DNA from: Phallusia mammillata
Taxonomy: Eukaryota
NCBI GenBank assembly: GCA_965637545.1
Contig: OZ281501.1
Coordinates: forward strand, 5,394,001-5,458,000
Reading direction: 5' to 3'
Length of the DNA stretch: 64,000 nucleotides
Position numbers and translations under genes: made by a program
Shown: piece after piece, positions 6,380-56,905 of the stretch
How the letters are laid out: each line of letters begins with the position of its first letter
Numbering within the stretch: position 1 is the first letter of the stretch
The notes under the pieces: model-generated
Seen by the model: the letters and a program-made list of their open reading frames with translations, nothing else
What the model was told of the DNA's origin: nothing
Database searches by the model: none

Positions 6380-16286
<9,907 letters not shown>

Positions 16287-18909: not shown

Positions 18910-21900
18910 ATGTTTGTGCATTACGTGTGTTTGGTATTCTTTACTTTTTCTTGCGGACAGGCCTTGGCAAATGCAACCGACATTCAAGGAGACTGCGCAC
19001 CTGCGGTTCACTCGGGGTAATTATTTATTACGGAAGAAAATAAAACTGTGATCGTACAGAAAAACAACGACTGCTTTCAGTAGCGTATTAAAAGCTTCAG
19101 TATTGTATCACAAAATACTGAAGAGCATGGTTATTGTAGGCTTTGTAATTTTATTACGATCATTTTTTTAAGTTTAGAAGATATTGGTCTGTTTGACTGC
19201 AAGTCAACTTTACTCTGGTTGGAATATTTTCGTCGTTGTGGTTTGAAATTTTGCTTTTCCTATTGAAAATATATTGTTTAGGTGCAAGTTCTTCTCCCAA
19301 TACATGCAACTGTGGTGCGATGCTTCTAATGTGTCAGAGATCCCCGATCCAGCAACGATACGAAGTTTCGGTCCCGCAAAATTTGCAACAACGTTGTATA
19401 TCAATAGAAGCTGTATTACCGTAATTAATACGGGTATGAAATCTATTTTTTAAGTAGACCATATATTTTGCCAAAGTTTACAATATATTTTCAATTCTAT
19501 TCAGAAAACTTGAACAAGTATGGAGATTTAAAACTGGTGGATTTTAACAACAACTTAATTGAAACGCTGTCAGACTTCACATTCTTCTTGTGCAAAAAAC
19601 TTAAAACAATAAAGTTGTCGTACAACCGGATTGAAGTTGTTGGACCCAAGGTTTTTGCAGGTAGGTATGCTAACTGCTAGTTACACAACTTTGTCAAAAA
19701 GCATTGTTTGCACCGGTTTGATTTTGTTGCTCAAAGTGTCTAACTTATGTTTTACTAAAACCATTGTTAATTTTGTTTATTAATAATTATTCTTTCCACA
19801 ACAAAATTTAATTACAATTAACCATTACTGTTTCTCTCTCAGGACTAAAGCGACTAAAAGTGCTGAATTTGAACCAAAACGAACTCTCTGTTTTACCTGA
19901 GAAGTTGTTTAACGAGTTAACAAGACTTCGGGTTTTGGACCTTAGCAGTAACAAACTTTCACATATAACAACAAGGATATTTCAAAACCTCCTGTTTCTG
20001 AAATCGCTTGATTTGAGCAAAAACTGCTTGAAAACTCTGACAATGTGGAACTTGAGAGGACTTCCACAGCTCAGGTAGCAATAACAACGATTTATATGTT
20101 TGTTATTTTTCTCTTAAGGGTTTAAATCCTGAAAAGGTTTGAAAGATAAAAAAGAAAAGTCCTCTGGTACGTTTTAACCTTGTCCTATAGCTCAATGGTC
20201 GGCAACAACCTGGCCGCGGCCAGGTTCCGTAAGGGGTTCGTTACCGGGCCGCATAAAACTTGCTCAAGGTTCACATTGAATCAAAGTTGTAAACTGTAAT
20301 CAGTTTTCAGTGCTGAACATTTGTGGTTTTCAAAGGCCGGTCCGTGATAAAAAATTTTAGTTTCAAACCGGTCGGCAGTATAAAAAAAGTTGCCGACCCC
20401 TGCTATAGCTAATAAACACTTTATGTGAACAGGAGTTTGAATCTGCGTGGAAATGCCATAAACAGAGTTGAAAGATACGCGTTTTTCAGCTGCCCTGGCT
20501 TACAGACCGTGGATCTACGGGAAAACGCTATTACCTGTTTCGACGAAAGACTATTCGAAAAATCGTAAGTTTGATACTACAGTACATGTCTGAACAAAAC
20601 AGAATGGCTTTTGTCCTGAGCAAAGAGATTATATCATAACTAGTTTGTGAAACATAGCTGCTTTAAAACCTTTTTTACTATGTTTAGTTCGTTGCGAGTA
20701 ACGAAATCATGTTCACATAAACAGGGGTTAAATATTACGGTAACAAATATGTTCAACAAATGTATGTTTTTTGTATGTAACCAGTAATCTCTTGCGCCGA
20801 TGCCCCACTTCAGGTTGCTATTTAGCATTTGTTGCGTGCAAGTAATGGAGGCATAAATATTACACCAGACCAAGACAAACTTACATTTCCTCGTAACTCG
20901 TAACAAATCTATTTACACTGCAATCAAAATGTGTAGGAGAATCGTCTATGTCATAAAAACAAATAACCTTTTCACCTGTCGCTTTCAGTTATAGACACCC
21001 AACCCAAGCAGGCGATACTTAAGTGTTGTTTATGACGAGTTCATTTGTTGTTTGTTTGTTTGTATGTATTACGTTTATCCTCGTTGGGCGGGAAACGCCT
21101 GATGAATTCGTTTTGCTCACTTCATGTCCGACAAGGTACTTTGTTTTTCCCAAATTGATTATTTTGTCTAAGGGTCTAAAATTTCCCAAATTGATTATTT
21201 TGTCTTTGCTTAAGTTCAATTTAATCTATCGGTATCCACTGGATTAGACCAATCCCGTTATGGTTTTCCTTAGAAAAAGACAAGTGATCGAGACATGTTT
21301 AGAACCCATAACCTTGTTTAAACAAACACCAATGTTAAGCTCTTTCTTAAACATTTTAGGGAGATATCGACCATTTTGCTGAATGACAATCAAATACAGA
21401 TACCAAAACCGAACTGGTACAGAAACTTGCCGCGCAGCAATCAACGGAAATTTATACAGGACGTTGAATCCATAACTGCAAACAATAAGTGGATGTGTGA
21501 CTGCAATGTGTTACCTTATCAGGTAAAACAACTTTGATATTTTACGCAGTTCCTATAATGGGTTTGGAGATCATAATACACATAAGCGTTTCTTGTAAAG
21601 GGTTTTGCAGCTTTGGCTGTGAGTTTTGAATAAACTCCTTTGCTTGCAGCAAACTCCTATTATATTTACTGTACATTTCAGCACTTTCTCAGTGTTGAAC
21701 TTAAAGACGTGGACTTTTGGGTCCGAAAGCTGGACATCGAATGCAGTGGACCAGCTGCCTTCAAAGGTCAAATGCTCAGCAATATTTCGGCACCAACAAT
21801 TAACCAATATTATAATAACACATGCCACAGTCTTCTTCACTTCAAGTGGGACCCTTGTTTCGCCAAGCATCCATCTGTTGGAACGAAAATTCACGCGACT

Positions 21901-22191
21901 CCAGCAAGAACCACTAAAATGCAAACAACTAACTCCATATTTGGAGTTGAACCTACATTGCAGACGGTGCTGAAAAACAAGTCACCAAACTTAGAACATT
22001 TGCAATACGCTTCATTTGTAATTATGTGTTTGCTTGTGGGTGCGTTTTTTGTGGCCTTGGTTCTCCTTCTAGGCATGTTCCATCAAAACAGAAAGGAGAC
22101 TCGACAACAATATGCGAAAGAAACTTGTTTCCAAACGGACGAGAGTGTCGTGTTTGTCGGAAGCCGTTCGTCTTTTCAAGATTCTGTTTAA
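18910..22191 (+). CDS. LRR transmembrane protein, paralog A (~483 aa; signal, Cys cap, ~8 LRRs, LRRCT, stalk, TM, short tail ending FQDSV)
   Basis: Exons 18910-19016, 19282-19433, 19505-19660, 19843-20074, 20433-20564, 21360-21522 and 21682-22191 (1452 nt; intron phases 2,1,1,2,2,0). LxxLxLxxNxL repeats, NNKWMCDC and TM ASFVIMCLLVGAFFVALVLLLGMF. Confidence 0.9.
20193..20402. mobile_element. hAT MITE in intron 4 of gene A (same family as 41361-41595)
   Basis: TIRs CAATGGTCGGCAAC / GTTGCCGACCCCTG; perfect TSD CTATAGCT. Confidence 0.9.
21019..21110 (-). repeat. Possible SINE 3' tail with (TGTT)n microsatellite
   Basis: (TTGT)n followed by TGTATGT..TTTATCCTCGTTGGGCGGGAAACG. From memory it resembles the tail of ascidian Cics-type SINEs; not verified. 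Confidence 0.35.
21146..21205. repeat. 36-bp-period direct duplication
   Basis: TTTCCCAAATTGATTATTTTGTCT at 21146 and 21182. Confidence 0.85.
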
Positions 22192-25100: not shown

Positions 25101-25793
25101 GTTTTGCTTTCATTTTCAGCAGGTAATCAGGTAATAAAATGTTAACTTGATTTGTGGCTGATTTAAACTTGGCTTTGTAATGGTGAATGGCTAACATACA
25201 ATATGTTTTTTGTGTGTTAAAAGTAAAATTAAGAAAATATTAGTCCAGGAAACAAGTTTGCAAAAGACTTCAGTTTGAGAAAGAGACAGGTCATCAACGA
25301 GAAATGTACTTGGTATTGATATGTACTGTAGTGGTATACGTGTTATGAGTTGCATTTCTACAAAACTTAGTAAGAAGTGTACTGCAAGTTAATATTTTCC
25401 AAAAGATTAGACAATGATGGACAGCATACACCTTTATGAGGTTTGAATATAGGGGTAACTTGAATACCACTTGGAAAAAAGGAATCTTCAACAGTTACGT
25501 CAAAAAAAAAAACTGCTTGAGTTTTCAATCAGGTTACTGCAAACATGTGATTTACGGTTAACCGCCGCCGCGGTGTCACGTGTTTTGAGCTTGCTGTTTA
25601 GCTTTTCAGACATTACGTCATTTGTAAGTCCACCCACACAGTTTCGCTTGGTTGCTCAACAAACTTTAGGAGTTCCGTTGAGTTTGTGGCGAAAGCTGTT
25701 ATCCACATGACTACAACAAATATAAAGAAAAACGTACAAAAGAAAGTGGTGCATGTGTAAAAACGTGACAGTTACCACGTGGACATGACAACT

Positions 25794-28700
25794 TTACACC
25801 TTGGTAATCACAGTATTCATACTTGTCCAGTTGGAGGTCCGTGTTTTGTAATTTTTTGCCAACCAGGATATAAAGGCTCCAGCGATCAGTAGCAGTAAAA
25901 TAACTACTGGGATACTAAACCAAACCACTGGTGGATATTTTTGGGAACCTGTCTTTTTCTGCACTTCGACATGCATTAGGGTTCTTGCCTTCAACTGGTT
26001 GTCTTGTGGTAGGAAAGAGTAAGACACGGTTTGTGCACTATCAACTTGATGTGTGGCATTACACTTGTTGGCAATAGCTATCTCCAAGTCGGTAATTTCG
26101 GTGAGGTACTTGTTTGTGAAGTTAATAGGTGAGATGCATTTAACTTCCAACTCTGCGATCATTTCTTGTACGTGACTCTTATTGCTGTGAGTAGTTTGTA
26201 GAAATTCCTACACAAAAATATTTTAAGTGTTGATAGCAGGGATGGCACTACGGTACGATTTTTGACATTTGGTACGGTACGCTCTGCGTATCGAGGTACG
26301 GTCAATGCCATCCTTGGTTGATATTTAAAGAAGTTTGTAGGCTATCGCTCAGACCCATAAATTTTTCCCAGACAATTCAATTAAACCCAATACAGTAGCG
26401 CAACACAAACGAAAACCTCTATTTACATTTTGCTGTTTGGGGTTTAACCAAAATGCATACAGCGTTACTGACACTATTCAGCCCATTGACGTGAAACGAC
26501 CTGATAAAGCGAAGCGAAGTAGTGAAAATTGTGACTGTACAATACACATCCTAAATTCAACTTAGTTACCAAATAATCCAATGCGTTACAGTCACATTTC
26601 CATGGATTTTCTTGCATTCCAAATGCTATTGATTGGTTTGTGTCCACCTTGTAATTCAGCATTACATTGAAGAACCATTCCTTATGCGGGGTCACCAATC
26701 TATTTCCTCCCAAATGTAGGTTGCGAAGATTGCTGAAAATGTCATCATAATATTTTTAATTAAGATAGGCTACTGGGGTTTTACAAACTTAAGAGCAAAC
26801 AGGTATCGCTGTATCCTACTAAAGGCAAACATAACCAACATAAACTAAAAAACTTAGATGATGTTAATTGCTGGTTGACCTGATTTTTGCACTTTTTTCT
26901 ATCTTTAATTGCCATCTTACCGCAAAGTGGAAAAAAGCTTTGAATCCAACGAGTGCAGTCTGTTGTGTCGTAAGTCGATGTGCTCGAGCAATGGAGAGTG
27001 TTTAAAACTTCTTGCGTCGATCGTCAGAAGTTTGTTATCGTGAAGGGTCAATTTTCTGATAGAAAAGATAAACATTATCAGACCTGTGGTATTAATAAAT
27101 AAGTCATCATCGCTGTGGCAAAACTGTTTGGGTTTTCATTTCAAGGTTGTTGTTTTCTATGTAAGTTATGGCACAAGTTGGGATAATGTAGTTTATTTTG
27201 TCGCTACAAGGTTTTTTTAAGCTGTTGTTGTGCGGTTTAACAAGTAGGTCTATAGCCTACAGCGGTTCTTTGTATTTCACAACTTTCCAAATAGGCTACT
27301 TTAAATAACTTACTAGTTTTGAGTTGAAACATTTGTATGTAACACTTACTTTAAAGATTCCATTCCTTCAAACGAGTAATAGGCAATTCTTGAAATTCGG
27401 TTGTGGCCAAGTTCCAAAACCTTAAGCTGCTTAAGAACTTCATTTTTTGTGCGTGGCCATTCTCGCAGATGATTGTGTTTTAGAGAAAGAGTACGAAGTT
27501 TCGGAACACCGGCAAATAGTTTTGCTGTCAAATGCTTTATCAGGTTTCGGTCTAATATTAAAGTTTCCAATGCTGGTAGGTTTTGGAAAACGCTATGGTG
27601 GATTTCTGACAACTTGTTATGATTGAGTTCGATGACTTCGAGGTTTGGAAGACCTGTATACATGTAACTATCTGTTACTATTTCCTTTTTGAAACAACAA
27701 CTCAAAACATGTCCTTTGGCGACACGAGTAAACTCAAGCATACCTAATTACTTTAACATGGTTTAATGAAACTTGTTTTGAAATGTGCTGCATTGTAATT
27801 TGAACTACAGCTCAGCTTAGGGCCTACTCCTCCACACAAAGGGTTGTGTCGTGGGTTCAAATCTCACAAGTGTATAGTTTCTCTTTATGTATGACTTGCT
27901 TTTATTTGTATTGGACGTTTTTGCGTCAACCAACCTTTAAAAGAGTCTTGGTGAATATGAGTAATGTAGTTGTTGGAAAGGATTATTATCTCAAGTTTGG
28001 GGCAGGATTCAAATGCCGATGGTTCAGTTTTAGTTAAAAGGTTGTTCGATGCATCAAAAACGATAAGACATGTGTACTCCTCCAAAGCATCTAAAAAATA
28101 AGCAGCTGTTTTTACTCGACCCAGGCCCGCGCGCAGCAATCTTACAACGCAACACACACACCACACATTGCACATGATCACAAGACGACTGTGGTTTGTA
28201 AAAACACACTCCAAATATGTTCGATGCAAACACAGACTTATTCATTTTAAAAAGTTTAACCTTCCTAACAGTGTCTGTCGGTTGTGCCGCACAATTATCT
28301 CATGTGACTTTTGCAAAAGTTACCCGCTTTATAAACAAACGGGGTTTTACGGGTAAACACGTAAAAATCCAGTAGGTTGTTGTTGGTAGGTCATCCAACT
28401 TAAAACTAGTTTTTAAAGTCTCTTAAAAATGTAAAACCATTGTTGCTGTCATGGGACTCCCATAATACCTTTTCATTTCGGTTGATCGACATTGCCAAAT
28501 TTTATGGTATTTTCTGCTTGTTTGGTTTTCTGATACAAACAATCTATCATTATTACACTAAATGCAACTGGCAATTACCTTTGGTAATTGTGGTCAGACA
28601 GGATGAGTTGAAAAACAAGGACAGTGACCTTTCTGGTGGAGCGTAAGCTACAATGTCAGCAGGATTTGGAATCACTGTAAAGTCTGTCTCATCGCACCAT

Positions 28701-29627
28701 AAGTCCATGGTCCGGTAATCAAGGTAGCACCTGATCAACACAAAACCAAAAAGTGGTCAACAACTCTATTTGTTTCTGATGTTTACTAACCCTAAGTGGC
28801 ATTGAGTGTTTGCAAAATTTCGCTGACATGGTTGTAGCGCACTGTTAACACTCATTTGGGTTGTTTTTTGTACGTTGGCGGCCTAAATCTGCCCTGATGT
28901 TGGGTGCAAACAAAGTTCCGTAAATAGAACTCAGTAAAGGGCAAATAAGATGTAAATAATGTCCCACACCTACCTTGTACACATGTTTGAATTGCAATAC
29001 ATACCTTATATGGAAGAAGTTGTTTCAGATTCTATATATGGCGTGGATAAACACTATTGATATGATGGTAGCCGAACTGTGTGGGTGGGCTCATAATATT
29101 TGAATGTTTTTTTTAGAAGAAAGGACAAACACACTTTGAATGCCCCATTTGTCTTGCAAATATATGCATTAAAATATGGTGCAACCAACCAACCTAGATT
29201 TCCTATAATTTAAGTGTGCGCCTTGCTTATACGTAAGTTGACTTTAAACTGTGCAAAATCGTTTTATTTGTCACCCGATAGTGCGGAATATGCATGCACA
29301 AAACAGTAAATAAGATTGCAATTATAGAGAGGTTTAGCTAACAAAAAATTACACCAATGAAAGAATCTATAAAACCAATACTTTGTCATGAACGGGTTGC
29401 TAGTCGTACCTGGAACCATTTTTAGCTTTAGGACATGATGGTGATTTCATGGCCTCGGTGAAGATAAGAAAACTCAGTAGCAACACAAATGGTTGTATGG
29501 CAAACATGCTAAGTTTAAAAAATCTTACACCTAAAATGCAAAACCTGCTTTCAAAGTTGGCTTACAGCGACTCCTGGGACTCTTGGCAGTTTGTCGTCAC
29601 GCTGAATTGATTTGAAAAAGAAAAATT
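25794..29627 (-). CDS. LRR transmembrane protein, paralog B (one extra LRR; short tail ending VITKV); start codon unresolved
   Basis: Exons 28579-28730 (152), 27935-28090 (156), 27350-27653 (304), 26921-27055 (135), 26570-26732 (163) and 25794-26207. Candidate upstream exon 29566-29627 (..NCQESQESL, GTAAGC donor, phase 2). ENPWKCDC and TM VVWFSIPVVILLLLIAGAFISWLA. Confidence 0.85.
26237..26316. mobile_element. 80-bp hAT micro-MITE in intron 6 of gene B
   Basis: TIRs CAGGGATGGCA / TGCCATCCTTG; TSD GTTGATAG/GTTGATAT; internal GGTAC repeats. Confidence 0.75.
27806..27868 (+). repeat. Degenerate tRNA-like/SINE head
   Basis: A-box-like AGCTCAGCTTAG and B-box-like GTGGGTTCAAATCTCAC; no convincing cloverleaf. 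Confidence 0.35.
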
Positions 29628-37043: not shown

Positions 37044-40000
37044 TCACACAACAGTAATTGAATGTTCCTGGATTTCCATTGCCGAATTCTTATCTGTTGT
37101 TATACTTTGTGTGTCAACCTCCCTCACCGTTTGCACCTGTATCGGTAATTTCAAAGGTGTCTCGCCGTCGTCTTCACAGTAAGCAATCTGACCCTCGCCC
37201 ACCGAATGATAGGCGCTGTCCGAACGGTGTCTTGCGATCTTTGGGGATCTGGCTTGCGGCGTTTTGTAATGCACACCATTCAGGTCTTTGGTTATAACTT
37301 GAGGGGGGTCGTTTAAAACAAGTTGAGTGCTTGTGGTTGTTACCACGGCTTTAGGTTCCGTTTGTGACTCTGGGTCAGATAGTAAAGGAAGATTAGTATT
37401 AGCTGATCCTGCTGGTATCTTGTCCTCTTTCTTTTGGATGCGTGGTGTTTCTTTTTGAGGTTGCTTTTCTTTAAGTTTGTTTTTGCGTTTTCGCCGGCTA
37501 ACAAACACAGCGATTACAACTATTACCACAATGCTGGCAACAACAAATGCTACAATCAATACCAAAAGCACACTGATTTTAAACTCGTCTTCAGTCCCAA
37601 ACGCTTTTGGAGACGGTTGCTCCACCGGTTCTGTAACTTGTTCTGTCGTAGATTTTATGGGGTATGTTGCAAGTGGATTAACATTTTCAGGTGGCAAAGT
37701 TTCCTCTTTTTTAGGCTCCACATCCTCTTTGGGGATCGAATCTTTCTTTTCCGGTGCTGCGATTACCACAGCCGGGGTTGAGATGCTTGCTTTGCTTGTA
37801 GCCGGTGATGGTTTTGTGGACGTTGGTTGTTCTTTCGGACAAAATATCGGAAGAGACAACGTGCTAAGCATTTTTCCCGCAGCGTTTCCAGTTTGACATT
37901 GAATGTCCAGAGTAGTCTTCCACTGCGGACTTGTGATGCCGTTTTTAAGGAAATACTAACAAGAAGTACAAAGGTCATTTTACATTGGAAATTGATGTTC
38001 AAAGTGACGTTGTAGCTCCGTATATACCACAACAGCTAAAATGTCATTAGTTTACCCTTCCATTAAAGCTTAATACCAAGCACTCATACCAGAGTCACAA
38101 TAGTCACAGACACAATCGCATGACCACCGAGTTAAATTCGTATCCAACTTTGAAGCTTACCCAATACTCATAGACACAGTCGCATGACCACGGATTGCCG
38201 TTTACGAAATATTCGGATGAGAATGAAGGCAAACTTCCGCTATGACTCGAGGTCCTGAATAAATCGGGGTCTGGGTAGGTCAGCTGGTTGTTAGCAAGTA
38301 GAACGTACTTGAATTGTCTGCAAACGAAAAAAACAAATGTTCTGGTGGCTTGATTTGTAGTGTTATAGTTTTTTTTGTGACAAGCGATTTTGTTTGATTG
38401 ATAAAATCACCAAAATGCGTTTGACTTAGATGTCTAAATGCATGTAGGAATTTTGAGGTGTTTTCACTTTCAAGGGTTTTTAGCTACCTAGGACAAAAAA
38501 ATCAAAAAAGTTTTCCTAAACCGAAACAGGTAATTTAAATGACCAAGCTTAATCTCGTAGACGAAGTCGAAAACCTTGTAGTTTTATTTAGTCACATACA
38601 TATGAACACGTAAAACTCTAAATGATTTTATCCTTTATAAATCAAAATGAAGCGGAAATCGATTTCAAATTTTCATTAACCTTTCTCGAAACTTTTGTGT
38701 GTTGTTTATAGTGTTGATGTTATTTTGTCGAAGATCAAGTTTATTCAATTTCGGATAATAATGAAGGTCCATTCCGTCGAAACTAGTCAATCTGTTGTCT
38801 TTAAGAAGTAGAGTTCTACACAGAAATACAAACCATCAAATTTATGCTATCTGTTTAAATACATGTTGGTGCTGTCCCAGTCAGAAAATATCTCGGAGTT
38901 ATCCCCGGGCCAAACTAGGGATTTGGGACACTGTTCGAATTAGCAGTGGTTTATCTTAGATTAACTCAGATAAGTGTTCTTACACATTTTTCTTATTTGA
39001 GGTTGTGGAGACGATGTTTTAACAAGTAAACAATATTTTAATTCATGTTATTGCAAACTATGTTAATCTTGTGGAAAACTGTTTCTATGATTATCTGCGA
39101 TAACCCATGGGTAAATCGTGGAAGTACCGATGGTATTTTCGGAATCCTGTGTTATTGCCAAATCAATGACTTTACATCAAATTTACTGTTTAAATAAGTT
39201 TAAATTTGTATCTAGCCTACACAACTAATACCCTATAGGCCGACATAAAACGCGTGGGCATATAAATTATCAATAGAGCTTTTTTTTACACTCGCTGTAC
39301 ACATTTTTTTCGTTGTTGAAACATACAATACACAAACTATGCGAACTATTTTAAAATTATTGGCTGGTTTCGTCACTGTGAGTCCAGTTATTCCCGCGTT
39401 TTATCTTTTTGAAAGAGTTTGGCAAGGGACCAGACTTGATTTCACTACAACGATTTAGGTTTTGGCGGGTGGCGCGTATTTACGTGGATTTAAGTTGTTT
39501 GAAGTCCGTTAGTGCATAAAATACTTAGTGTATTTGTTTAGACTCTATAGGTATTAATTAAAGTTTGTGGAATACATTGCTTCATGAAACAAGCCATAAG
39601 GCAGCAGGTTTGTGGAATGTATAATGACATATGTAAAAGTCTTTTAGATGTAGGCCACGTTAACTGCTAGCAACACTATGTTTACATTTTCCAACTTACT
39701 CTGTATATGTTAAATCTTATTTGCCAGTAATTGCCGATTTCTATTGATTCCCGCATTTCCTCAGTACAACTTGTGTTGTAATCTATTGCGTTGTGTGACG
39801 TAATAATCGACTACCAGTTTTGTGTGATAACGCAGCGTGATTTAGTCCTTTTCGTTGCTGACTTCCGTGGAGCACGGTGCTGCGTCGGTTTTATTAGAAA
39901 AGCCGTTTGTTGTCGTGTTGACGATTATTGGTGAGTCACTTTGTATATATATGTGTTTAATGACTCCAAAACGTGAATTACTACAATAAATGCGAACTTA

Positions 40001-42926
40001 ACTGCAATGACTTAAAATGTCATTTTGCTTTGTAATATTTGTACTGTACGTGTAGTTGGGTTCATTTATCCAACCATATTTATTTTCTGAGGAGTATTGC
40101 AATTCACATCTTACAAGGATGCAACAATTGACAAAATCGAAAATGAAGTTACCGTTTCTCTGGCTGGGGATTGGAATGGGAGGCGCGAGGAGAGAAGAAA
40201 AAAATTGAAAATTTAACAAATGAGAGTGACAGCAACACCAGTACGGACACCACACCATGTGAAGACTGCGATGACATGGAATGAAATCCAAGTTTGGGGC
40301 AAAAGTTGCATCTGGCAAAATGGCAAAATACTGCCTAAACGACTTTTGCCCCAACCTGCCGTTTAAACTGTTCGTTTGTTTATTATATCCGTGTGCGCGT
40401 AAGTACAATGAGAATAAATAATTGTAGCGGGTATTTTGCATTTGGTGTAAAGCAGGGATACGTTTGGCCAGGCTACTTCCACGTTAGGCCCATACATAAG
40501 GCCCTACCAAGGGAAATCAGCGATAATCTAACATGGGCCCGATGTTACCTTTCCTGTCTCCCGCCAGTGATAAATCTATGGGGTATCTCCAATCATCAAA
40601 TTATGGGCCATACTAAACTCGAAGATATTTCGACTAAGGCCCGCACAAAAATTTCCGACTGGGGTGGAAAAACAACAATTTCTTTCAACGTAATCGAAAC
40701 TAATATGAAAACAGCATTTATAAACATTTCAGTTAAATGCGCTTAGAACAAAAACTGTATTTAAATTATATTAAAATCGTATAAATAAAAATGTGTATGG
40801 ACCTTGGTCCTATTTAAATTAGTAATGATAAGTTCTTTTAAATGATCCACAAAAGCTATATTGGTCGAAACTAATTCCACAATTTTAATATGACCAAGTT
40901 GGCATATATTTGCCCACCTTAGACTGGGAAATTTAAAATCCCCGTTCCAGGGAAGGCTTGTTAATTGGTTTCCGCTGAGGTCCAAAATTTCCACTGATCT
41001 TAGAGACCGAAACGCATCGGGATGAATAACAGATATACGGTTGTTTGCCAACCGAAGTTCCCTAAGGCTTCCCAAGTCGTTGAATGCAAACTGCGTAATT
41101 TCAGTGATGACATTGTCGTTGAGATCAATCAAAGTGAGATTTGGAAGGCCTACAAAACATATTGGGATTTTTATTCCTCACTTAACTTGAAGTTTAGCTA
41201 AATAACAGTCTACACTTATAAGTTGCTCTTAAATTTTCGAATTGGTAAGCTTTCGTTTTATAGTCAATAGGATGAATTTAGAAGCCGAGCTTATACGATA
41301 AACACAAATTTAAAAGTGTTTAGACAATTCGATTGTTTAATCCCAAATAGTGCTCTATTACAGTGGTGGACAACCGCCGGGCCGCGGCACGGTACCGGTC
41401 CGCGACGAGTTCGTTACCGGGCCGTACAATTTTTTAGGTTAAATGGTTCAAATCATTTTGCCCAAGTATCCCGGGGATGATAAAGTAATTTAGGCGTTTT
41501 CATTGTTAAATATTTGTAGTTTTTTGAAGGCCGGTCCGCGATAAAATTTTAGTTTCAAAAATGGTTCGCAGTAGAAAAAAGGTTGCCGACCCCTGCTCTA
41601 TTACCAATTTGGTGCTCTATTACCCAGAACACAAAAGTTTAGGCTTTTAGAAATTACGACAATTTCTTTTAAACGAAACAACAATAGTTTGTCAAAAATC
41701 AGAAAGAATTTTACAATACCTGCAAATGCATGCTGATGGATAGTTTGAATTTCGTTGTTAGCGAGAGAGATATTGTGAACTGTAGTACAATATTTGAACG
41801 CGTTGTTTTCAACATATCTTATTTGGTTTCCGTTCAAGTTTACCTCTTGGAGACGTGGGTACGGAGCCAGATCCTCTGCAAAGTGTAGAATTCCTTGTAC
41901 TAGATGTTCAACAGAGTACGCTATGCTTGATATTCGATGTTATACTTGATGTTAAACACCAAAGCGAGCAAGAAATATCACTTAGTAGTAGTTATCGTAA
42001 ATTCAAAGTCAAAACATTTGCGTAACCCAATCAACTCAAAAAGAGTGGCAGACGGGATCGTCAGTGTAATCAAATTAATATTTCTGTTTTAAATAAAAGA
42101 TTACACTGACGCTTATTGTCTGCCATTCTTTTTGAGTATATTTGGTATAAGATTATTTGATAAGTGAAGACAGATCCGTGGGTCACCACCCTGTTACACA
42201 GGCGGATTCTTGTAGTCTGCTATGACATTACACTTACATTTGCGTTAATTGATGAAAATATCAACTGATTTTTGACTCACGAGGATATATTCTTTCGATG
42301 CAAGTACCGTTTGCCCATAGAATTTTGCCCGTCTGTGGTGGAGCTGGACTCACTATTTTGTCTGGTATGGGAATTCTAACGATGCTAGTTCCGTTGCAAA
42401 GAATTCTCCAGCTTCTAAAGTTGTAAAAACACCTAGAAGGCACAATGGCACTCTGTTAAATTTGCAGGCCTGTTAAGCCGCATTGATATGCATGATGTAT
42501 AAAAGGAATGATGACAAATGCTTGACTCTGATGACGTCATATTTTGCATGAAACAAATTAGGTTTGGCAAAAATGTTTGATAATTCTGTTCCTTTCGCAG
42601 GGTTTAACATTGCGTGAATAGTATTTCAAATATATTTCTGGTTCACGCTGGCATAAACCAAACCTTGCTATTTGACAGTTTGAACTTAAAGGATCAATGG
42701 TGCATTTGCAAATGTGGCGAAACTGCAACCGAGGCAATGAAGCAAAACCTTAACAAAGCTAGGCAAACTAGTGTTATTATCTTGTGGGATTCATTATGTG
42801 AAGCTCTTACGTTGATTTACGACCGGTGCAGCTTCCAGCGTTGCCTAGGCTCATCGTGGTCCAAGCCACAGATAGCATGAACATCACGGTCTGTATAGAC
42901 CGATGTTGTTTTTGACAATATAACAT
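37044..42926 (-). CDS. LRR transmembrane protein, paralog C (~619 aa; Pro/Thr/Glu stalk, ~150-aa tail ending HSITVV)
   Basis: Exons 42811-42926, 42281-42432 (152), 41720-41875 (156), 40918-41149 (232), 38681-38815 (135), 38161-38317 and 37044-37955 (1860 nt; phases 2,1,1,2,2,0). GNPWSCDC; TM ISVLLVLIVAFVVASIVVIVVIAVFV followed by SRRKRK. Confidence 0.92.
38876..40663 (+). mobile_element. Non-autonomous CMC/EnSpm-like DNA transposon (1788 bp) in intron 4 of gene C
   Basis: Termini CCCAGTCAGAAA / TTTCCGACTGGG (11/12 inverted match), 2-bp TSD GT, GGGCC/GGCCC subterminal repeats, and a relic reading frame at 40091-40284. Confidence 0.75.
41361..41595. mobile_element. hAT MITE in intron 3 of gene C (family of 20193-20402)
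   Basis: TIRs CAGTGGTGGACAACC / GGTTGCCGACCCCTG; perfect TSD CTCTATTA; shares GTTCGTTACCGGGCCG and GGCCGGTCCG.GATAAAA with 20193. Confidence 0.9.
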
Positions 42927-45829: not shown

Positions 45830-47250
45830 CTTCACTTCTACCTACTATTTCGTCTCGTTGATCAAAGTTTTTACGTGGTACATGTCCAAGCTAGCCCTGG
45901 TTCTTTGAATCCGCAGACCATACAAAGTCGTTGAATTGTGCAACACCTGGGTATTGTCGCAAACTTTTCAGCGATGGACTGGAAATTCCATTTGTGCAAC
46001 TACTGTAGTTGCATTGGGACGGTTTTACAGAAATACGGTTATTATAATAGGCTATATGAACTTGGTCATGTTACATGGGGTTCGCTTTAATGCATTGGCA
46101 AATTGAACACTTTGTAATCAAATAGGCACACTAACAGATGATCTCTGTGTTTGGTAACTGTAGGCTAGCTAATTGCAATTACTGCATTTGCATAAACACC
46201 AATAATTCAACACTTAGTTTTGGATATGTTGCATTTGCAAAGATACTTACAAAGCTAGCAGCGTTGCTTTCTTCGAAAACAACCCAAGGTCGAATTTCAA
46301 CTCAACAAGCCTATGAGAATCCGAAACGTTATTCTGTTTCCCCCTGTTCAGGACAGTTTCGACAAGGGTTGATTGTATTCTTTTTCGTACTTTGCTATTT
46401 TATAGTGCAATGTATGGTCTTCGTGGTTGGTAACTGTTGGCTATATCCAATTGCAATTAAAATCAACAGAGAAAATTTAACACTCGGCCATAGTTTTGGA
46501 TATGTTGCATTTGCAAAGTTGTTTGCAAAGCTGCAGAATTGCTCCTCACGCAACAACCCAAGGTCGAATTGGCAATCAGCACAAAATCTAAGAGGAACCG
46601 AAATTTTAATCACTTCCATGTTGCAACCCTATGCCCTCTTTAACGGGTAACAAATGCAGTGGTTCCAAAGGGCCCATACTACACTTCTCCCTGTTATTTA
46701 CTTGTTTACCAAAGTCGACGTGCCCAAGTTGACCGTAGTTCGCGAAACCCAGGCCAAACAAAGTCGTCCATTCGTGCAGCAGCTACGTATTTCCGAAATT
46801 TGAACAATCGCATTGGAACACCATTTACGAAACTATTGGGGGTGGTATCGTTACGATTGTTGTCTGCAGGAACGTATGCATGCTGCAAAAGGTTCGGTTA
46901 AACGCTATTTGAACACTTTAAATAGGTATAATGGTCTACGTGTTTGGTAACTATAGGCAATTGATTTGTCCAGTTACTGCATTTGCACAAATACAGAAAC
47001 AATCACTATTAGTTTTGCATATGTTGCGTTTGCAAAGATACTTACAAAGTTAGCAGCGTTGCTTTCCACGAAAACAACCCAAGGTCGCATTTCAACTCAA
47101 CACAACAAGTCTATGAGGAACCGAAACTTTATATTCGCTTCCTCCAAACCTTAGTTTGCAAGCGCAGCAAATCCAAAGAACATGTCCAGAATACCTGTTT
47201 TACATATTCGTTTGCTCTTGTTTTGTTTTTCGTGCTTTGTTATTTTATGG
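45830..47250. repeat. Diverged ~800-bp tandem duplication with an additional internal ~275-bp copy
   Basis: TAGTTTTG.ATATGTTGC.TTTGCAAAG...ACAACCCAAGGTCG occurs three times (~46217, ~46491, ~47010). CCA.ACAAAGTCGT and TTGAACACTTT occur twice (~45918/46103 and ~46754/46910). Confidence 0.85.
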
Positions 47251-50286: not shown

Positions 50287-50351
50287 TGTTTTTGTTATGG
50301 TTATGGTTTTCCAATTGCTCGTTATGGAAAGCCATAACCATAACAAAAACA
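50287..50351. other. 27-bp near-perfect inverted repeat (hairpin) ~260 nt past the stop codon of gene D
   Basis: TGTTTTTGTTATGGTTATGGTTTTCCA - 11-nt loop - TGGAAAGCCATAACCATAACAAAAACA; one mismatch, which is a G-U wobble on the plus-strand RNA. Confidence 0.85.
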
Positions 50352-50608
50352 CAAAAAAGTTAGAAGGGGGTCATTGCTAAAACTTGATTGTCATTGTTAA
50401 GAAGTAGAGCATGAATAGCCGCTTGCTAATCTTGTTTCCCCTTTATTGCCGAAATTATTTGGTTTTGAATTTAGAGCTAAGCAAACCACGACTTGTTTTC
50501 CGAGGGTCTTTTTTCCGATCACTACTGAACCGTGGATCGAAACCGTTCGGAAATCCGAAAAATATACAAAGCGTTTTTTTCGTCACTTGGTGTTTTAGCG
50601 GCGAAAAA

Positions 50609-53600
50609 TCACTTGTTGATATTTCCACAATGCATACAAGAGCCTTGAGGAAGTTCCATTACTATCTTCACCGGATGAGAGGACTCTAACTTCACGAACG
50701 AGTTCATTTGCGTCGGTGATCCGTGGCCTTCTTGTGTCACGTGATGTTGCTTGGGAACTGTGTCGCCCTGCTCAAACACCCCCTCTTGAATATCCTGCAA
50801 ATTGGAAAGAAAACTTAAACCCTCGTCTTCGTGATTAGAATAACACCCGCTGTCGTTCCGGTTCCGTTTCGGACAGCAATTGTTATTCGGATTCGATTCG
50901 GGATCAGAATAGACGTGATTTTGTTGCGACTGATTTTGTTGCGCATTAAGAGGCATATTCGGTGTTGTCTGTTCGATTATGTCTTCCCGGTTTTCCTGAA
51001 CAAAATTTGGATTCTGTTTTTCCTCATCCTTGTCTTGTTTCACCCGACTTACACTGCACCTCAAGCGTTTTACGGCAACCAATATGCTAATCATTACAAG
51101 ACAACCTATTACAACCATTATAACAATCCAAAGTTCTCTAGGTGGGGATGTGCCCGTTGGCGCTTTGTCATTGCTTGCTACAATAGTCATGTTCTCTTTT
51201 TTATTGTCAACCATTTTATCAGCAGTTATTTTCGGAAGAACTATTTTTGGTGTTGTACTTTTGGTGGTTACTATAGTAGTGGTTGTTGTAGTGGTGGTGG
51301 AGGACTTGGTAGTTGGTGGTTTGATCGTCGGTGGGGCTGAACAGTTTTTGTTTTCTTCCTTTGACTCACAAACATCGAAGTAGGACTGTTTGAACCGACT
51401 AAGCTTTCTTCCTTGGTACTTTGCTGGTAAACGGCATTCTACGTCGAGCGCACTCCTCCATTTCTTAGTTACGATTTCGCTTGTCAACATATGCTGTAAA
51501 AAAAGTTTTTTTTAAGAAAACGTGTAGCCTGTTTAGTCTGATTTCCAAACAGTAAATCTTCTGAAAAAATTCTGAAATTTACCCAGTATTTGAATGTATT
51601 ACCCTCAAATAAATTTTGTTTACAAATTTGCAGCAAAAAGGGTGTAAATAGGGCCGCCGTCAATCCAATCTAAGAATTCAGGCTTACAAACGTTTGCATA
51701 CAACCGTTTTGAATCTATAATAACGGTTAAATGCGTAAAATTCTCCACCAACCCGATTTCAATGTAAACATGCAGGTAGATTTAGTGTCTGCACCCCAAA
51801 GCTGACACTTAAATAACCTTATCCAAAAAGGAAAACAACAACTTTCACGTACCCAGTAGAAGTACGCAGAGCAATCACAATTCCACAGGTTTCCGTTTAC
51901 GTAGGTTGCAGCGTCGGGCTCTTTGCCGTGTTTGAAAACGCTCCGGAACCAATCGGCGTTCAAGCTAGCCAACTGGTTACCGCTCATTTGCACGCTTTCC
52001 AGCAACCTGCAAAAGCAGATGCGTTTTAAGTACTTGTGCCAAGTTTACTGTAGTGGCGGTTTGGGCTTGTGCTAAGGCGTTTGATAAGGTTTACGCCATG
52101 GCGTCTTGCTGGTGATGGTTTGCTAGTAGTTCCATTGCGTACAAGGGGAGTGTTTAAAGTCCAGTGTTTTGCGGCTTTTCGAAACATTTAAGCGACATTG
52201 CTCTAACCAAGGGGTGCACAACCTTTTCGCAAGGACGGCCACATTCCAGATCCTTGTTTCTTCAACGGCCGCAAAATGTGTTCTTGTTTTTATTTGTAAA
52301 TCACCGATGTAAGGAAAAAGGTTTCCCATACATATACCATCTAATGGCGCCTAAAAAACCCAAATTAATTTCTGACTTGATTTAAAGATCGAGCTGAACA
52401 GGATGTCGATCATTCCTAACTCTCATGAAGTCACCATCTACATTGTGACGCTTATTGTGCCTATTTTTTCGCATTGTTAGTCCATAAAAGGCCTACAAAA
52501 AGTTGGACGAATGTGAATACTGTGCTGGAAAATTTATTTCCACCCCCATTAAAACTATTCAGACCAGTTTTGAAATTCAAATATCTAGCAAAAGAGTTTT
52601 GTTTACGTCACAGCCGTTGGCCCATGTATTTCAATGTACACACATGTTCACGGCCGCATAAATTCGTCTCCGCCGTCGCGTTTGGCCGGACGTTGTGCAC
52701 CCCTGCTCTAACCTATAACGACTTTTTGTTTTAAAGTCGTCATAACACACTACTTTGCAAATAGTTGAATAGACAACATTAAAATACTCTGCAAAAAACA
52801 CTTTTAGTGCAACATTTTAAAATACTGCAGGCACGCCTGAAACAAAACCAAGTTTATTTATTTTGCTTTCGAACCTCATTTTGAAATTCTCGGAGCCGGT
52901 AATGCATGAAATGTTGTTATCTTGCAGGTTAAGGTTCGCCAGTTTTGTAAATACTCGTAGCTCGCCCCCATTGAACGACTGAAGTAGATTCCCTTGCAAA
53001 TTTAGAGTTCTGCAAATAGGCAAATACAAAAATATCGTATTACTTTTTCCTCTTATTTTGTTAAACTTTTATTAATGGTAGAAAGTGGTCATGCACTAAA
53101 AACGAAATCAAGACTTTATTTTATTTTCACATAAACTATTTTAAACATTAATCAGTATTCTAATAAAAACTTTTCAAATTCACTTTATGAGTAAATTCTA
53201 TGCGCCTGTTTATTCAACACTTTGCGATGGCCACATAAAGGAATACTAGTTTAGATGAACAAAGTACTTTATTCGTACCCCAGATTTTGAAACACAGTCT
53301 CGTAACCCCAATCAAGGCGTCGAATTTTGTTTCCACTCAAGTCCAAACTCTTCAGTTTTGCCAATCCACTGAATGCATTTGTCTCTATTACCTCGATTGC
53401 GTTATTTGCCAAAGTAAGAGTTTTAAGGTTTCCGAGTTCGGTGAACAACGTTGCGCTGATCCGAGTTAATTTGTTGCTGCTTAGAGACAAGACTTCGAGT
53501 TCAGTCAAACCTAAAAACACAAAGCCTTGTTAATAGAATATGAATTCGTTCAGCCAAATTTTAATGCCCAGCAGATTTAACATAAGACACTTCTTCTCTG

Positions 53601-56600
53601 CATTAGATTTACAAGACATGTTTTATTGTAGAAAACTAAACAAACGTTTGGTGATTTCAGGTTGAAGTTTATTGTGTTTTAAATTTCATACAACCTAAAC
53701 GTGTACTACGCATATCTTTGTTTTCAGTAAGGGGTTAAATTCTAATCATAGAGTGCAATTCAACAACTAGAGGATAAAATGAAGCCAATAAGGAATTACA
53801 AACATAAAGTTGATCACCGAGTTTTCCCAAGGTAAATTGCAACTCGTGCACACAAAACAAGTGGGTTAACCAGTGGGTTGCTATGAAGCAATGATAACGG
53901 AGAAGAGTTTCTCTTAGCATTCACCAAGAGGTTAAGCAAACACTTGGGAAACCACAGTGCAGTGATTTTCTCCCTACATTCAGACTAAAAGCACACAATT
54001 TAGGCTGATAAGAAAAGACTGGGGATTTTGTGATTAGTTAATACGTCCAAAGTGTCAATGGGACTTGTCCTATTGACGTGTTTTATGTGTTGTAATGTAC
54101 TAGCACGTTTTATTTAAAAGTTAGTAGTATTGTCTATTCTTAAACACGAAACACTGCTCCCATCTACAACGCAACTTGGTAGGATACTAAACCTAGGATT
54201 TCGGAATAACATGGTCCAAGGCCACCAAAAAATGTTTGTTACTGGTTTCATTGCTTGTTCCGTGTTACTGATTGCATCAATGGCCAATCAAATATTTTTT
54301 GTTATTTTTACATTTTATTCTGGCCTGGCACGGAAGTAGCACAGACATGAGACCGATAGTGCCCGAGGCAACTTAGCACGCTTGTTCGTAGTCTTTCTCC
54401 AAGAATTCTTTGTTTGGTTTCAATTATGTCCTGAGGACAGAACACGAATTTGACCACAAGTATTTGCTGAAATGTCTCGGTATTGCCAAAAAAATTTCAA
54501 AAAGGGCTAACTTGGCACAAAACCCTTTTAAAATACAATATAATTAAAAAGACCCGTTATACTGCATATAGTATGTTGTTGGTTTTCGAATTGAAAAAAA
54601 AAACATTTCTTAAAGCTCATGGGACTTTTAAGTTGATAGAATTTTACCCTTAACGTAGTTTCACCTACCATTAAACGCGTTGTCGTCAATGTGAGCAATT
54701 TGGTTGTGGGAGAGAATAAGGGTGGTCAGCTTGGTGCAAGCGCGGAACGGCTGTGCACTGATGCGTGTCATCTTGTTGCCATCCAAGTTGAGAACTTGAA
54801 GTCTAGTGTATGGCACCAGATCACCTGGAACAAGCACAAATGCACCATTGAAACGGAGTTTAGCGAAGTGTATCCCCCACATCATGTTTTGGCGGTACAT
54901 AACAAAATGTTGATGTGCATGATAACCCCGCTAGTGCAGTGGTTAACCAGTGGCGTTTCAAAAAGTACGCGAGTAGCTTTCTGTTATATATATTTAGTTC
55001 AAGTCAATTCAAACACCTTAAAAAAAAAACTGTGTGTACCCATCACATGAAAGTTGAAAATTCATTTCTGGGCAATTGTTTTATGTATTTTCAGTCCGCG
55101 GAAGCGTGCCGCGAAAGATTTTAGCTTGTTGAAGCCATACGAAGTGGAAACTAGAGTTTTGCAAACAATATTTTACAAAGACTTCATAATACAGGACATA
55201 GTTTATATGTAACCGATCTAAATTAATGATTAACGGAACAGGATATTGAAGACCCATTCAACCATTAAACCTGGCGCACGAACCTCGGAATCGTTGCACC
55301 ATATTCTTGTTTGCTGAACAACTAATAACTGTAGCTGAAAAAAGCCTACGATTCGCCTCACTGAAAGGGTGATGCAAGTAAACGCAAAAGGCCATGTTTT
55401 TAGTGAAAAAATGGAGCACACTTTATTATGCATTACAATATCGACAGATACAGGGTCTTTGAGCGTAACAATTTTAAGATAACAGTTGTACTGTTGGTTT
55501 TAGCACCGCAGGGCAACACATTTACGGGGTTTGATTCGAAGTTTGTTTATTAACTATTTTGTTATCGTCACTCGAACTTTGGTTTTATGCTACAACATGT
55601 GCAGGTGTTGGAACGAAAATGCAAATAAGTAACTAAAGTCACTTTCAATTGATTGTACCCTGGCGTTTGTAGTTCTTTGCGCCTATATTTACCTTTTGCT
55701 ATTACCCCACTGTTCAAAGACCCCCTGTTGATTTTGACAATGGCCTCACGGTGTTTACTGTTATACCAACGTATGGAATTGCGACCCTTTGTGCACACTG
55801 TGCGGTTCAGGGTTTAGATTGTTTTGTTAACCAATCGAGTTTATTGAATTCAAATCAGAAAGTCGAATTGCAGTGGAATGGCCTTTGTTGCTTTTGTGTG
55901 TATAGAACGACAAAGATTTTAGTCCTTATTCAAATGTTTACAGCATCAAACACGAATATCTCATTACTCGCATATTCCTATCAACCTAACAAGGGTCAAC
56001 CCCTTAACCCGATTTTAAGACATATAAATTTGGTTTTACTTTTATTACAAACTGTGTCAGCCTTTGGAAAAAACAGAAAAATCCACTCACTTTCTTCAAT
56101 TCAAATCCACTTTCTTCAACCCAAAGTATTACAAAAAGAAATAAACACACCTACTTTTACAGACGAATAGGTCGGTTATTGCAACATTGACACCATATGA
56201 TCGTGTTTAAACTAATGGCGATTTTAACTTGCTGTGGTTAAAAATTGTCCTAACGTATAAAAATCCACGACACAAAGTTTTGTTGTCAGCTAAAGATCTA
56301 AAGTTAGAAAAGAAACCAAACACAACTTACTTTGGAGGTTTTCGAGACAAGTTGAGTTGAAAAACAGACGCATGCTATAAGCTGGATTCATGTAAGCCTG
56401 AATAGTGTCTGGATCAGGGATTTGTGTGAGATTTGAATCGTCACACCACATCTCCTCTGTCTTGTAATCAACATAGCACCTGCAAAGGAGAAATTGCTTA
56501 TATAGTTGGTGAGCCTTTAATATCTCATAGATTTATTCAATTTCAGAAAACTAAAGTGCAATGGTTCCTTTTCTTGGGCGAAAGGTTGACAAGAATTCGG

Positions 56601-56905
56601 TCTGGATCAACGTACAAACTAATCATAAATAGGCATTTTGCACAACCAAAACGTTTACACAGTTTACGGTACACAATGCATATAGTACATGCATTATACT
56701 ATATCAAGCATAGGTCAGCAAAACCAAGCCTGTGGTGGGGTTTGAACCCCACCTACGCAATAACTAATTATTTTGTTATCTTAACAAACATTTCCACCTA
56801 CATCTTATCTCTTTTCGGTGTTCCGTCTTTGCAACTGTACGCAAATGTGCATTCGATCCACACAAGGACTCCAACTTTGGCGATAATCAATTGCAAGTAA
56901 CGCAT
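50609..56905 (-). CDS. LRR transmembrane protein, paralog D (~604 aa; poly-Thr mucin-like stalk, ~150-aa tail)
   Basis: Exons 56802-56905, 56331-56479 (149), 54669-54824 (156), 53279-53510 (232), 52875-53009 (135), 51853-52006 and 50609-51493 (1815 nt; phases 2,1,1,2,2,0). Signal MRYLQLIIAKVGVLVWIECTFA, GNLWNCDC, and TM LWIVIMVVIGCLVMISILVAV followed by KRLR. Confidence 0.92.
52209..52705. mobile_element. hAT MITE in intron 5 of gene D
   Basis: TIRs AAGGGGTGCACAAC / GTTGTGCACCCCTG; perfect TSD CTCTAACC. Confidence 0.9.

What the first reader, a model, noticed from the sequence alone, without database searches (positions are those of the whole stretch)
18910..56905. Cluster of four highly diverged TIR-less LRR receptors with a fixed 7-exon blueprint
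Seen: the four genes share intron phases 2,1,1,2,2,0 and exon lengths (exon 2: 152/152/152/149; exon 3: 156 in all four; exon 4: 232/304/232/232; exon 5: 132/135/135/135; exon 6: 163/163/157/154). The proteins differ widely outside the LRR scaffold positions. Known: the layout Cys cap-LRRs-LRRCT-Ser/Thr/Pro stalk-anchor, with no Ig, FN3 or TIR, is the plan of GPIb-alpha, LRRC15/LRRTM-type and Tartan/Capricious proteins and of lamprey VLRs (which are GPI-anchored). Inference: this is a lineage-specific, fast-evolving recognition receptor family (immune, allorecognition or adhesion). I could not assign it to any named gene.
Basis: partly seen in the sequence, partly recalled or inferred. Interest (0 to 1): 0.75.

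Follow-up and report, generated by a model that had tools for sequence, protein, structure and literature searches.

The report
Four tandem sea-squirt LRR membrane-protein genes
Four neighbouring genes in a sea-squirt genome encode very diverged cell-surface proteins built only of leucine-rich repeats, a stalk, a membrane anchor and a short tail; this is an ordinary kind of animal gene cluster, and I could not show any immune or self-recognition role.

Summary
At 18910-56905 there are four complete genes, g1 on + and g2-g4 on -. They encode 473-605 aa proteins with this layout: signal peptide, Cys N-cap, 8-9 regular 24-residue LRRs, canonical LRRCT, stalk, one TM helix and a tail.

- **Domains:** Pfam finds LRR_8 and nothing else, so no TIR, Ig or FN3.
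- **Divergence:** pairwise identity is 26-30%. Scaffold positions are 67% identical. Concave and convex variable positions are equally scrambled (19% and 14%), so there is no concave-face signal.
- **Tails:** g3 and g4 share two short motifs in the same order (SDPES, RxRxDS[GA]xxS). Three of the four proteins end in Val.
- **Relatives:** exon-wise searches found none for the C-terminal halves. The spliced full-length models could not be searched, so orthology to a named family stays open.
- **Expression:** RNA-like runs covered only a repeat in g3 intron 4, so expression is unconfirmed.

Verdict: these are new members of the known 'LRR_Only' type I membrane class, which is known for tandem clusters and fast divergence. 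The adhesion/recognition reading is plausible. The immune or allorecognition reading is untested, and weakly disfavoured for g3. This scan had not reported the cluster before on other DNA.

The parts
18910..22191 (+). g1, 7-exon LRR-TM gene, 483 aa. Exons 18910-19016, 19282-19433, 19505-19660, 19843-20074, 20433-20564, 21360-21522, 21682-22191.
   Evidence: all GT-AG, phases 2,1,1,2,2,0, open frame; LRR_8 in exon 4 (E 9e-19); TM at 22015-22077, tail 37 aa ending QDSV
25794..29507 (-). g2, 7-exon LRR-TM gene, 473 aa. Exons 29410-29507, 28579-28730, 27935-28090, 27350-27653, 26921-27055, 26570-26732, 25794-26207.
   Evidence: exon 4 is 304 nt (one extra 24-residue LRR); LRR_8 E 2e-23; TM at 25866-25928, tail 23 aa ending ITKV
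37044..42884 (-). g3, 7-exon LRR-TM gene, 605 aa. Exons 42811-42884 (alternative ATG at 42926), 42281-42432, 41720-41875, 40918-41149, 38681-38815, 38161-38317, 37044-37955.
   Evidence: LRR_8 E 4e-18; Ser/Thr/Pro-rich stalk (38% STP), TM at 37509-37571, tail 154 aa ending ITVV
50609..56905 (-). g4, 7-exon LRR-TM gene, 604 aa. Exons 56802-56905, 56331-56479, 54669-54824, 53279-53510, 52875-53009, 51853-52006, 50609-51493.
   Evidence: LRR_8 E 4e-19; weak LRRNT in exon 2 (E 0.0014); poly-Thr stalk (41% STP), TM at 51071-51133, tail 153 aa
37365..37379 (-). g3 tail motif SDPES
   Evidence: the same pentapeptide is in the g4 tail; it occurs in 0.04% of shuffled g4 tails
37203..37232 (-). g3 tail motif RHRSDSAYHS (RxRxDS[GA]xxS)
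50894..50908 (-). g4 tail motif SDPES
50837..50866 (-). g4 tail motif RNRNDSGCYS (RxRxDS[GA]xxS; contains DSGxxS)
   Evidence: 0 of 100000 shuffles of the g4 tail carry the pattern (the pattern was chosen after seeing it)
38874..40663 (.). High-copy repeat (transposable element) inserted in g3 intron 4. It is absent from the haplotype in DNA run X9. It accounts for most of this intron's 2102 nt.
   Evidence: an X9 contig joins 38873 to 40664 at single-copy depth; the skipped part has depth in the thousands to 137000; RNA-like runs hold only this part

Best explanation
These are four old tandem duplicates of one ancestral gene. Each encodes a type I membrane glycoprotein of the 'LRR_Only' extracellular-LRR class.

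Shown from the sequence:
- a signal peptide;
- a disulfide N-cap split over exons 1 and 2;
- a curved domain of 8-9 regular 24-residue LRRs;
- a canonical LRRCT (NxWxCDC...C...C) split by the phase-0 intron 6;
- a stalk, Ser/Thr/Pro-rich in g3 and g4 and so probably O-glycosylated;
- one TM helix;
- a domain-free tail of 23, 37, 153 or 154 residues.

Inferred mechanism: the LRR arc, held away from the membrane by the stalk, binds a protein ligand on another cell or in the matrix. Each paralogue has a different surface and hence probably a different partner. The tail has no enzymatic or death/TIR fold. It couples through short linear motifs. One is a C-terminal [ST/D]-x-V, of PDZ-ligand or ER-export type, in g1-g3. 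In g3 and g4 there are two more: an acidic SDPES and a basophilic-kinase/phosphodegron-like RxRxDS[GA]xxS. These would control trafficking, turnover or scaffolding. On this reading the proteins work like adhesion or recognition molecules of the LRRTM / Lrtm / Tartan-Capricious / GPIb-alpha type. They do not work like Toll-type signalling receptors.
For: - Gene models and shared blueprint.
- LRR_8 in exon 4 of all four, and no Pfam domain in any exon 7.
- Regular 24-residue spacing, TM helices, N-glycosylation sites, stalk composition and tails.
- N-cap and LRRCT conservation (C1, C12, IPxPxxI; NxWxCDC; C...C).
- The frames are intact over 473-605 codons although identity is only 26-30%. That implies long-term purifying selection (inference).
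- The g3 and g4 tails cannot be aligned overall, yet they keep two motifs in the same order.
- Three of four C-termini end in Val, and two are class I PDZ-type T-x-V.
- Literature: LRR_Only genes show independent expansion, rapid divergence and tandem clustering. Lrtm1/2 carry PDZ-binding ends (PMC2235866).
- The nearest solved sequences are generic typical-LRR ectodomains, including LRRC15 and LRRTM2.
Against: - There is no expression evidence. Three RNA-like runs have no contig on any g3 exon, and g1, g2 and g4 were not tested.
- No ligand, tissue or orthologue is known.
- The tail-motif readings (PDZ ligand, kinase site, degron) come from general knowledge of consensus motifs and are untested. 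The RxRxDS[GA]xxS pattern was defined after seeing it.
- g4 lacks the C-terminal Val.
- The g3 signal peptide is weak.
Confidence: 0.65

Rival explanations
1. A tunicate-specific, rapidly diversifying family of immune or allorecognition receptors. The LRR concave faces would be under diversifying selection to bind microbes or non-self, like a membrane-anchored analogue of VLR or TLR-like 'LRR-only' proteins.
For: - The non-scaffold residues are very diverged and the genes sit in a tandem array.
- The C-terminal halves have no detectable relative among 1.84 billion representatives or in the word searches.
- LRR-only TLR-like proteins take part in immunity in some animals (PMC8609888).
- Tunicates have few TLRs (same paper).
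Against: - Concave positions are not more diverged than convex ones (19% against 14% identity, permutation p 0.95).
- There are only four genes, all about equally distant, and no young copies or pseudogenes. That is unlike a birth-and-death immune array.
- A second g3 haplotype, the one without the intron repeat, differs at about 0.1% and at no coding site laid. This is unlike allorecognition loci.
- With only 8-9 LRRs the ectodomain is far shorter than a TLR ectodomain.
- The tails carry adhesion-type rather than immune-type motifs.
Confidence: 0.12
2. Diverged orthologues or co-orthologues of a named, conserved chordate LRR-TM family, for example LRRTM, LRRC15/GP5, TPBG/5T4 or Lrtm/LRRC26-type. 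They went unrecognised only because the spliced proteins could not be searched whole.
For: - The exon-wise PDB search places LRRC15 and LRRTM2 among the hits.
- The architecture and the PDZ-type ends resemble these families (PMC2235866).
- Every blank search used only the fast-evolving C-terminal exon or one short LRR exon, under a length filter.
Against: - The PDB hits are generic, and IGFALS, LGR4, TLR13 and TLR3 score as well or better.
- N-cap and C-cap profiles match no solved family significantly.
- From my own knowledge, untested here: the named vertebrate families are mostly encoded by one or two coding exons, not seven.
- None of the tails has the LRRTM ECEV end or a TPBG-like SDV end.
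Confidence: 0.2
3. The genes are silent or partly mis-modelled, either recent pseudogenes or gene predictions that differ from the real transcripts.
For: - No RNA contig lies on any g3 exon.
- g3 exon 1 is uncertain.
- No protein of this locus is in the public protein collections searched.
Against: - Four frames of 473-605 codons stay open across 24 canonical introns at 26-30% identity. Cys caps, the Asn ladder and TM helices are all conserved. This is not expected without selection.
- The RNA-like runs are small contig sets, and their nature as RNA is only a guess.
Confidence: 0.05

Closest known systems
eLRR 'LRR_Only' type I transmembrane group (Dolan et al. 2007, PMC2235866)
   Same: Signal peptide, LRRNT-like cap, LRRs, LRRCT, TM and a short tail with no other domain. 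The group is described as prone to independent expansion, rapid divergence, species-specific singletons and tandem clustering. That is the picture here.
   Different: It is a descriptive class, not a clade. The survey covered worm, fly, mouse and human, not tunicates. No member was shown to be an orthologue.
LRRTM1-4 and Lrtm1/2 (vertebrate synaptic-type LRR-TM proteins)
   Same: One LRR domain with caps, a TM helix and a short tail with a C-terminal PDZ-type ligand. LRRTM2 is among the PDB sequence hits of g2 exon 4 (E 3e-21).
   Different: The hit is no better than hits to many unrelated LRR proteins. The C-terminal motifs differ. The seven-exon structure, the Ser/Thr/Pro stalk and the long g3 and g4 tails are not features I know from LRRTMs (own knowledge). 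Orthology was not tested.
GPIb-alpha / GPV / LRRC15 cluster
   Same: LRR domain with caps, a mucin-like stalk (GPIb-alpha), a TM helix and a short regulatory tail. Cpn2-Gp5-Lrrc15 are also genomically clustered. LRRC15 is a PDB hit (E 2.5e-29 over three stretches).
   Different: The score is inflated by LRRC15's many repeats. The repeat numbers differ. No specific cap or tail similarity was found.
Drosophila Tartan / Capricious
   Same: A tandem pair of LRR-only TM adhesion or affinity molecules.
   Different: This is an insect family.
Lamprey VLRs and amphioxus VLR-like proteins
   Same: N-cap, LRRs, C-cap and stalk. The best, non-significant match of the LRRCT-half profile is amphioxus VLR-like Bf66946 (E 0.023).
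   Different: VLRs are GPI-anchored or secreted and are assembled somatically from cassettes. These are complete germline genes with a TM helix and cytoplasmic tails, and no cassette arrays lie in the window.
Toll-like receptors and TIR-less TLR-like 'LRR-only' proteins
   Same: Typical-type LRRs. TLR3 and TLR13 are among the PDB hits.
   Different: There is no TIR domain. With only 8-9 LRRs the ectodomain is much shorter than that of a TLR.

Membership tests
eLRR LRR_Only type I TM class | Extracellular LRR domain | tested here: met
   Pfam LRR_8 E 9e-19 to 2e-23 in exon 4 of all four; 8-9 repeats at 24-residue spacing
eLRR LRR_Only type I TM class | No other recognisable domain | tested here: met
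   Exon 7 of all four has no Pfam family above cutoff, and the same holds for exons 2 and 6. The test was exon-wise only.
eLRR LRR_Only type I TM class | Signal peptide and a single TM helix (type I topology) | tested here: met
   Hydrophobic N-termini (weak in g3); one 21-residue segment of mean hydropathy 2.6-3.6 after the stalk. No dedicated predictor was available.
Toll-like receptor | Cytoplasmic TIR domain | tested here: not met
   No TIR hit in any exon 7 at E up to 0.1. The tails of g1 and g2 are only 37 and 23 residues.
LRR-Ig/FN3 adhesion families (LRRC4/NGL, SALM, FLRT, LINGO, AMIGO) | Ig or FN3 domain between LRRCT and TM | tested here: not met
   No Ig or FN3 hit. The LRRCT-to-TM spacer is a low-complexity stalk of about 65-95 residues.
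Lamprey-type VLR | Incomplete germline gene completed from flanking LRR cassettes; GPI anchor | tested here: not met
   The germline genes have complete open frames with a TM helix and a tail. There are no extra LRR segments in the window.
LRRTM | Sequence orthology to LRRTM1-4 and a C-terminal ECEV-type PDZ ligand | tested here: inconclusive
   The ends are QDSV, ITKV, ITVV and NINK, not ECEV. LRRTM2 is only one generic hit among many. No full-length comparison was run.
Named chordate LRR-TM family (any) | Reciprocal best match or a phylogenetic position of the full-length protein | not testable with these tools
   Spliced models have no reference and could not be handed to the search tools. 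Exon-wise searches were blank or generic.

The most novel reading that the evidence does not exclude
A tunicate-restricted family of LRR surface receptors. The ectodomains would have diversified to recognise different non-self or cell-identity cues. The long-tailed members would be switched off through a conserved phosphorylation-dependent degron (RxRxDSGxxS). This would be a chordate recognition system built on LRRs but wired differently from both TLRs and VLRs.
Probability: 0.1. Interest if true: 0.55.

Novelty: new member of a known kind. Interest (0 to 1): 0.25.

Why it matters
If they are expressed, these genes add four unannotated cell-surface binding proteins to a sea-squirt genome. They are a clean example of how LRR-only membrane proteins duplicate in tandem and lose nearly all sequence identity. 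What they keep is the exon blueprint, the caps and a few tail motifs. They could serve as markers or candidates for cell-cell recognition in a vertebrate sister group. As it stands the cluster does not open a new question. It fits what is already described for this protein class.

Tried and rejected
- **RNA support.** The run search with g3 gave RNA-like runs holding 7-19% of the words. Laying three of them showed contigs only on a high-copy repeat in intron 4 and on small intronic repeats, none on exons.
- **Word searches.** g3 exon 7, g2 exon 4 and g4 exon 7 all came back blank. The length filter excludes full-length relatives, so these blanks are weak.
- **Exhaustive HMMER search with g3 exon 7.** It gave 0 hits, not even the protein itself. 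This species' protein is not in the library, and the stalk, TM helix and tail have no relative at E <= 0.001.
- **PDB searches.** Profile searches with the N-cap (A1) and the LRRCT half (A3) gave nothing significant. g2 exon 4 gave generic LRR hits only.
- **Pfam on caps, exon by exon.** Only g4 gave a weak LRRNT hit. The N-cap is split by intron 1, which handicaps this test.
- **Metagenome scans.** The N-cap pattern gave no relative. The exon 4 alignment was too variable to search. g4 exon 4 gave 13 loci, all generic LRR matches at 22-58% identity, most in unbroken stretches of over 100 residues, GC 30-66%, none with cap or tail matches.
- **Concave against convex divergence.** There was no difference. 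dN/dS between paralogues was not attempted, because synonymous sites must be saturated at 26-30% protein identity.
- **Paper searches.** I found no described tunicate LRR-only TM family.
- **Left out by the operators' rule.** Search, fold and exact look-up of the joined spliced proteins.
Full report
**Observation.** Every internal exon was recovered. First exons were found as ATG-started open frames ending in a phase-2 donor. Each has a hydrophobic N-terminus and a Cys 8-11 residues before the splice. Last exons were found as phase-0 acceptors behind pyrimidine tracts.

The joined models were built only inside scripts:

| gene | strand | span | protein | exon lengths |
|---|---|---|---|---|
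| g1 | + | 18910-22191 | 483 aa | 107/152/156/232/132/163/510 |
| g2 | - | 25794-29507 | 473 aa | 98/152/156/304/135/163/414 |
| g3 | - | 37044-42884 | 605 aa | 74/152/156/232/135/157/912 |
| g4 | - | 50609-56905 | 604 aa | 104/149/156/232/135/154/885 |

All 24 introns are GT-AG. The phases are 2,1,1,2,2,0 in all four, and there is no internal stop. The 72-nt excess of g2 exon 4 is exactly one 24-residue repeat. tblastn of the four models against the window finds nothing outside the annotated exons. So the cluster is four genes, with no fragments or dead copies here. Only the g3 start is uncertain: the ATG could be at 42884 or 42926, and the signal peptide is weak.

**What the proteins are.**
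- Pfam finds LRR_8 in exon 4 of each gene (E 9e-19 to 2e-23).
- No family reaches its cutoff in any last exon, so there is no TIR, Ig or FN3.
- Each protein has 8-9 repeats at strict 24-residue spacing, 5-6 N-glycosylation sequons and one strongly hydrophobic 21-residue segment.
- The tails are 37, 23, 154 and 153 residues.
- The 90 residues before the TM helix are 38-41% Ser/Thr/Pro in g3 and g4, and 22-28% in g1 and g2.
- The N-cap has an invariant pattern in exon 2: C-x10-C, then IPxPxxI, then a further Cys. One more Cys sits in exon 1. Taken exon by exon it hardly matches Pfam LRRNT.
- The C-cap is canonical: NxWxCDC at the end of exon 6, then L...C...L...C at the start of exon 7.
- The introns do not fall at equivalent points of the repeat unit, so this is not a one-exon-per-repeat gene.

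**Divergence.** Pairwise identity is 26-30%, with no clear pairing of genes. Within seven colinear repeats, identity is 67% at scaffold positions, 19% at concave x positions and 14% at convex positions. Concave positions are not the more diverged class (permutation p 0.95). There is no signature that singles out the binding face. At this distance, old duplication and fast evolution cannot be told apart. Four long frames have stayed open, and they keep their caps, Asn ladder and TM helix. That argues for purifying selection (inference).

**Tails.**
- The g3 and g4 last exons align significantly only over the LRRCT half (E 7e-4).
- Both tails nevertheless contain SDPES, and further on RxRxDS[GA]xxS: RHRSDSAYHS at 37203-37232 and RNRNDSGCYS at 50837-50866.
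- SDPES occurs in 0.04% of shuffled g4 tails, and the longer pattern in none of 100000. That pattern was chosen after seeing it.
- From general knowledge, RxRxxS is the consensus of basophilic AGC kinases and DSGxxS is the beta-TrCP phosphodegron. These are leads, not tests.
- g1, g2 and g3 end in QDSV, ITKV and ITVV. T-x-V is a class I PDZ-ligand form. g4 ends in NINK.

**Relatives.**
- The word search found nothing for g3 exon 7, g2 exon 4 or g4 exon 7. It only sees proteins of 0.55-1.75 times the query length, so full-length kin were out of reach.
- The exhaustive HMMER search with g3 exon 7 returned no protein at all at E <= 0.001, not even the gene's own product. This locus is therefore unannotated in that library. 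The stalk, TM helix and tail have no detectable relative among 1.84 billion representatives.
- Against solved structures, g2 exon 4 hits typical-LRR ectodomains without preference: IGFALS, LGR4, TLR13, LRRC15, LRIG1, TLR3, LRRTM2 and chondroadherin.
- Profiles of the N-cap and of the LRRCT half hit nothing significant. The best was amphioxus VLR-like Bf66946 at E 0.023.
- Metagenome scans gave only generic LRR loci, most matching in unbroken stretches of over 100 residues.
- Orthology of the ectodomain to a named family therefore remains open.

**Expression and polymorphism.** The run search with g3 listed eight RNA-like runs holding 7-19% of its words, and two DNA runs holding 82-85%. When three of the RNA-like runs were laid on 37000-42999, their contigs covered only 38875-40670 and short pieces at 41395-41565 and 42193-42235. 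All of that is intronic and at repeat-like depth. No exon was covered.

DNA run X9 has a 4742-nt contig that joins 38873 to 40664 at single-copy depth. So a 1790-nt high-copy element sits in g3 intron 4 in the assembly and is absent from that haplotype. Without it the intron would be about 312 nt, like those of its paralogues. Over about 4 kb laid, this second haplotype shows roughly three substitutions and one indel. None lies in the exons covered. That does not fit a hyperpolymorphic allorecognition gene, although contigs can hide variants.

**Setting.** Earlier notes of this scan call the genome a sea squirt. I did not test this myself. To the left lie an ICA1-like gene on the minus strand (Arfaptin-domain exon at 12134-12367, E 8e-14) and a FERM-domain gene (FERM_N at 3091-3429). 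g1 is head-to-head with the ICA1-like gene.

**Comparison with what is known.** Dolan et al. (PMC2235866) define the LRR_Only group of extracellular LRR proteins. They describe independent expansion followed by rapid divergence, many species-specific singletons, tandem clusters (Cpn2-Gp5-Lrrc15; tartan-capricious) and PDZ-type ends in Lrtm1/2. The present cluster meets the defining features of that class that I could test. It fails those of TLRs (no TIR), of LRR-Ig/FN3 families and of VLRs (complete germline genes with a TM helix and a tail). The genes are therefore new members of a known kind.

**Mechanism and rivals.** The most likely mechanism is ligand binding by the LRR arc at the cell surface, with tail coupling through short linear motifs. 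This is an adhesion or recognition role. About 0.65 of my belief rests here. The gene models and the architecture are shown. The function is inferred. The rivals are:
- hidden orthology to a named family, 0.2;
- an immune or allorecognition family, 0.12;
- silent or mis-modelled genes, 0.05.

**Verdict.** This is a careful and correct observation of an ordinary kind of gene cluster. Interest is 0.25.

Noticed in passing
window 38874-40663: A 1790-nt high-copy repeat sits in g3 intron 4. It is present in the assembly and absent from the haplotype in DNA run X9, so it is an insertion polymorphism. Copies of it occur in contigs of the RNA-like runs. No clear terminal inverted repeats were found.
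   Followed up: partly
The Rfam scan of the whole window at gathering threshold returned no family at all. I did not look further.
   Followed up: no
window 6600-16000 (-) and 123-3429 (-): An ICA1-like gene (Arfaptin-domain exon 12134-12367, Gln/Pro/Met-rich C-terminal exons near 6643-7541) and a FERM-domain gene (FERM_N exon 3091-3429, long Lys/Pro-rich last exon 123-1244) flank the cluster on the left.
   Followed up: partly
window 46138-47154: Two ORFs about 830 nt apart share a near-identical peptide stretch (...YVAFAKILTKLAALLS.KTTQGRISTQ...), so there is a repeated element between g3 and g4. There is a weak sub-threshold Pfam hit to Far-17a/AIG1.
   Followed up: no
window 42811-42926: g3 has two in-frame candidate start codons. 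The shorter gives a signal peptide with only about 7 hydrophobic residues. Exon 1 is 74 or 116 nt, against 98-107 nt in the paralogues.
   Followed up: partly
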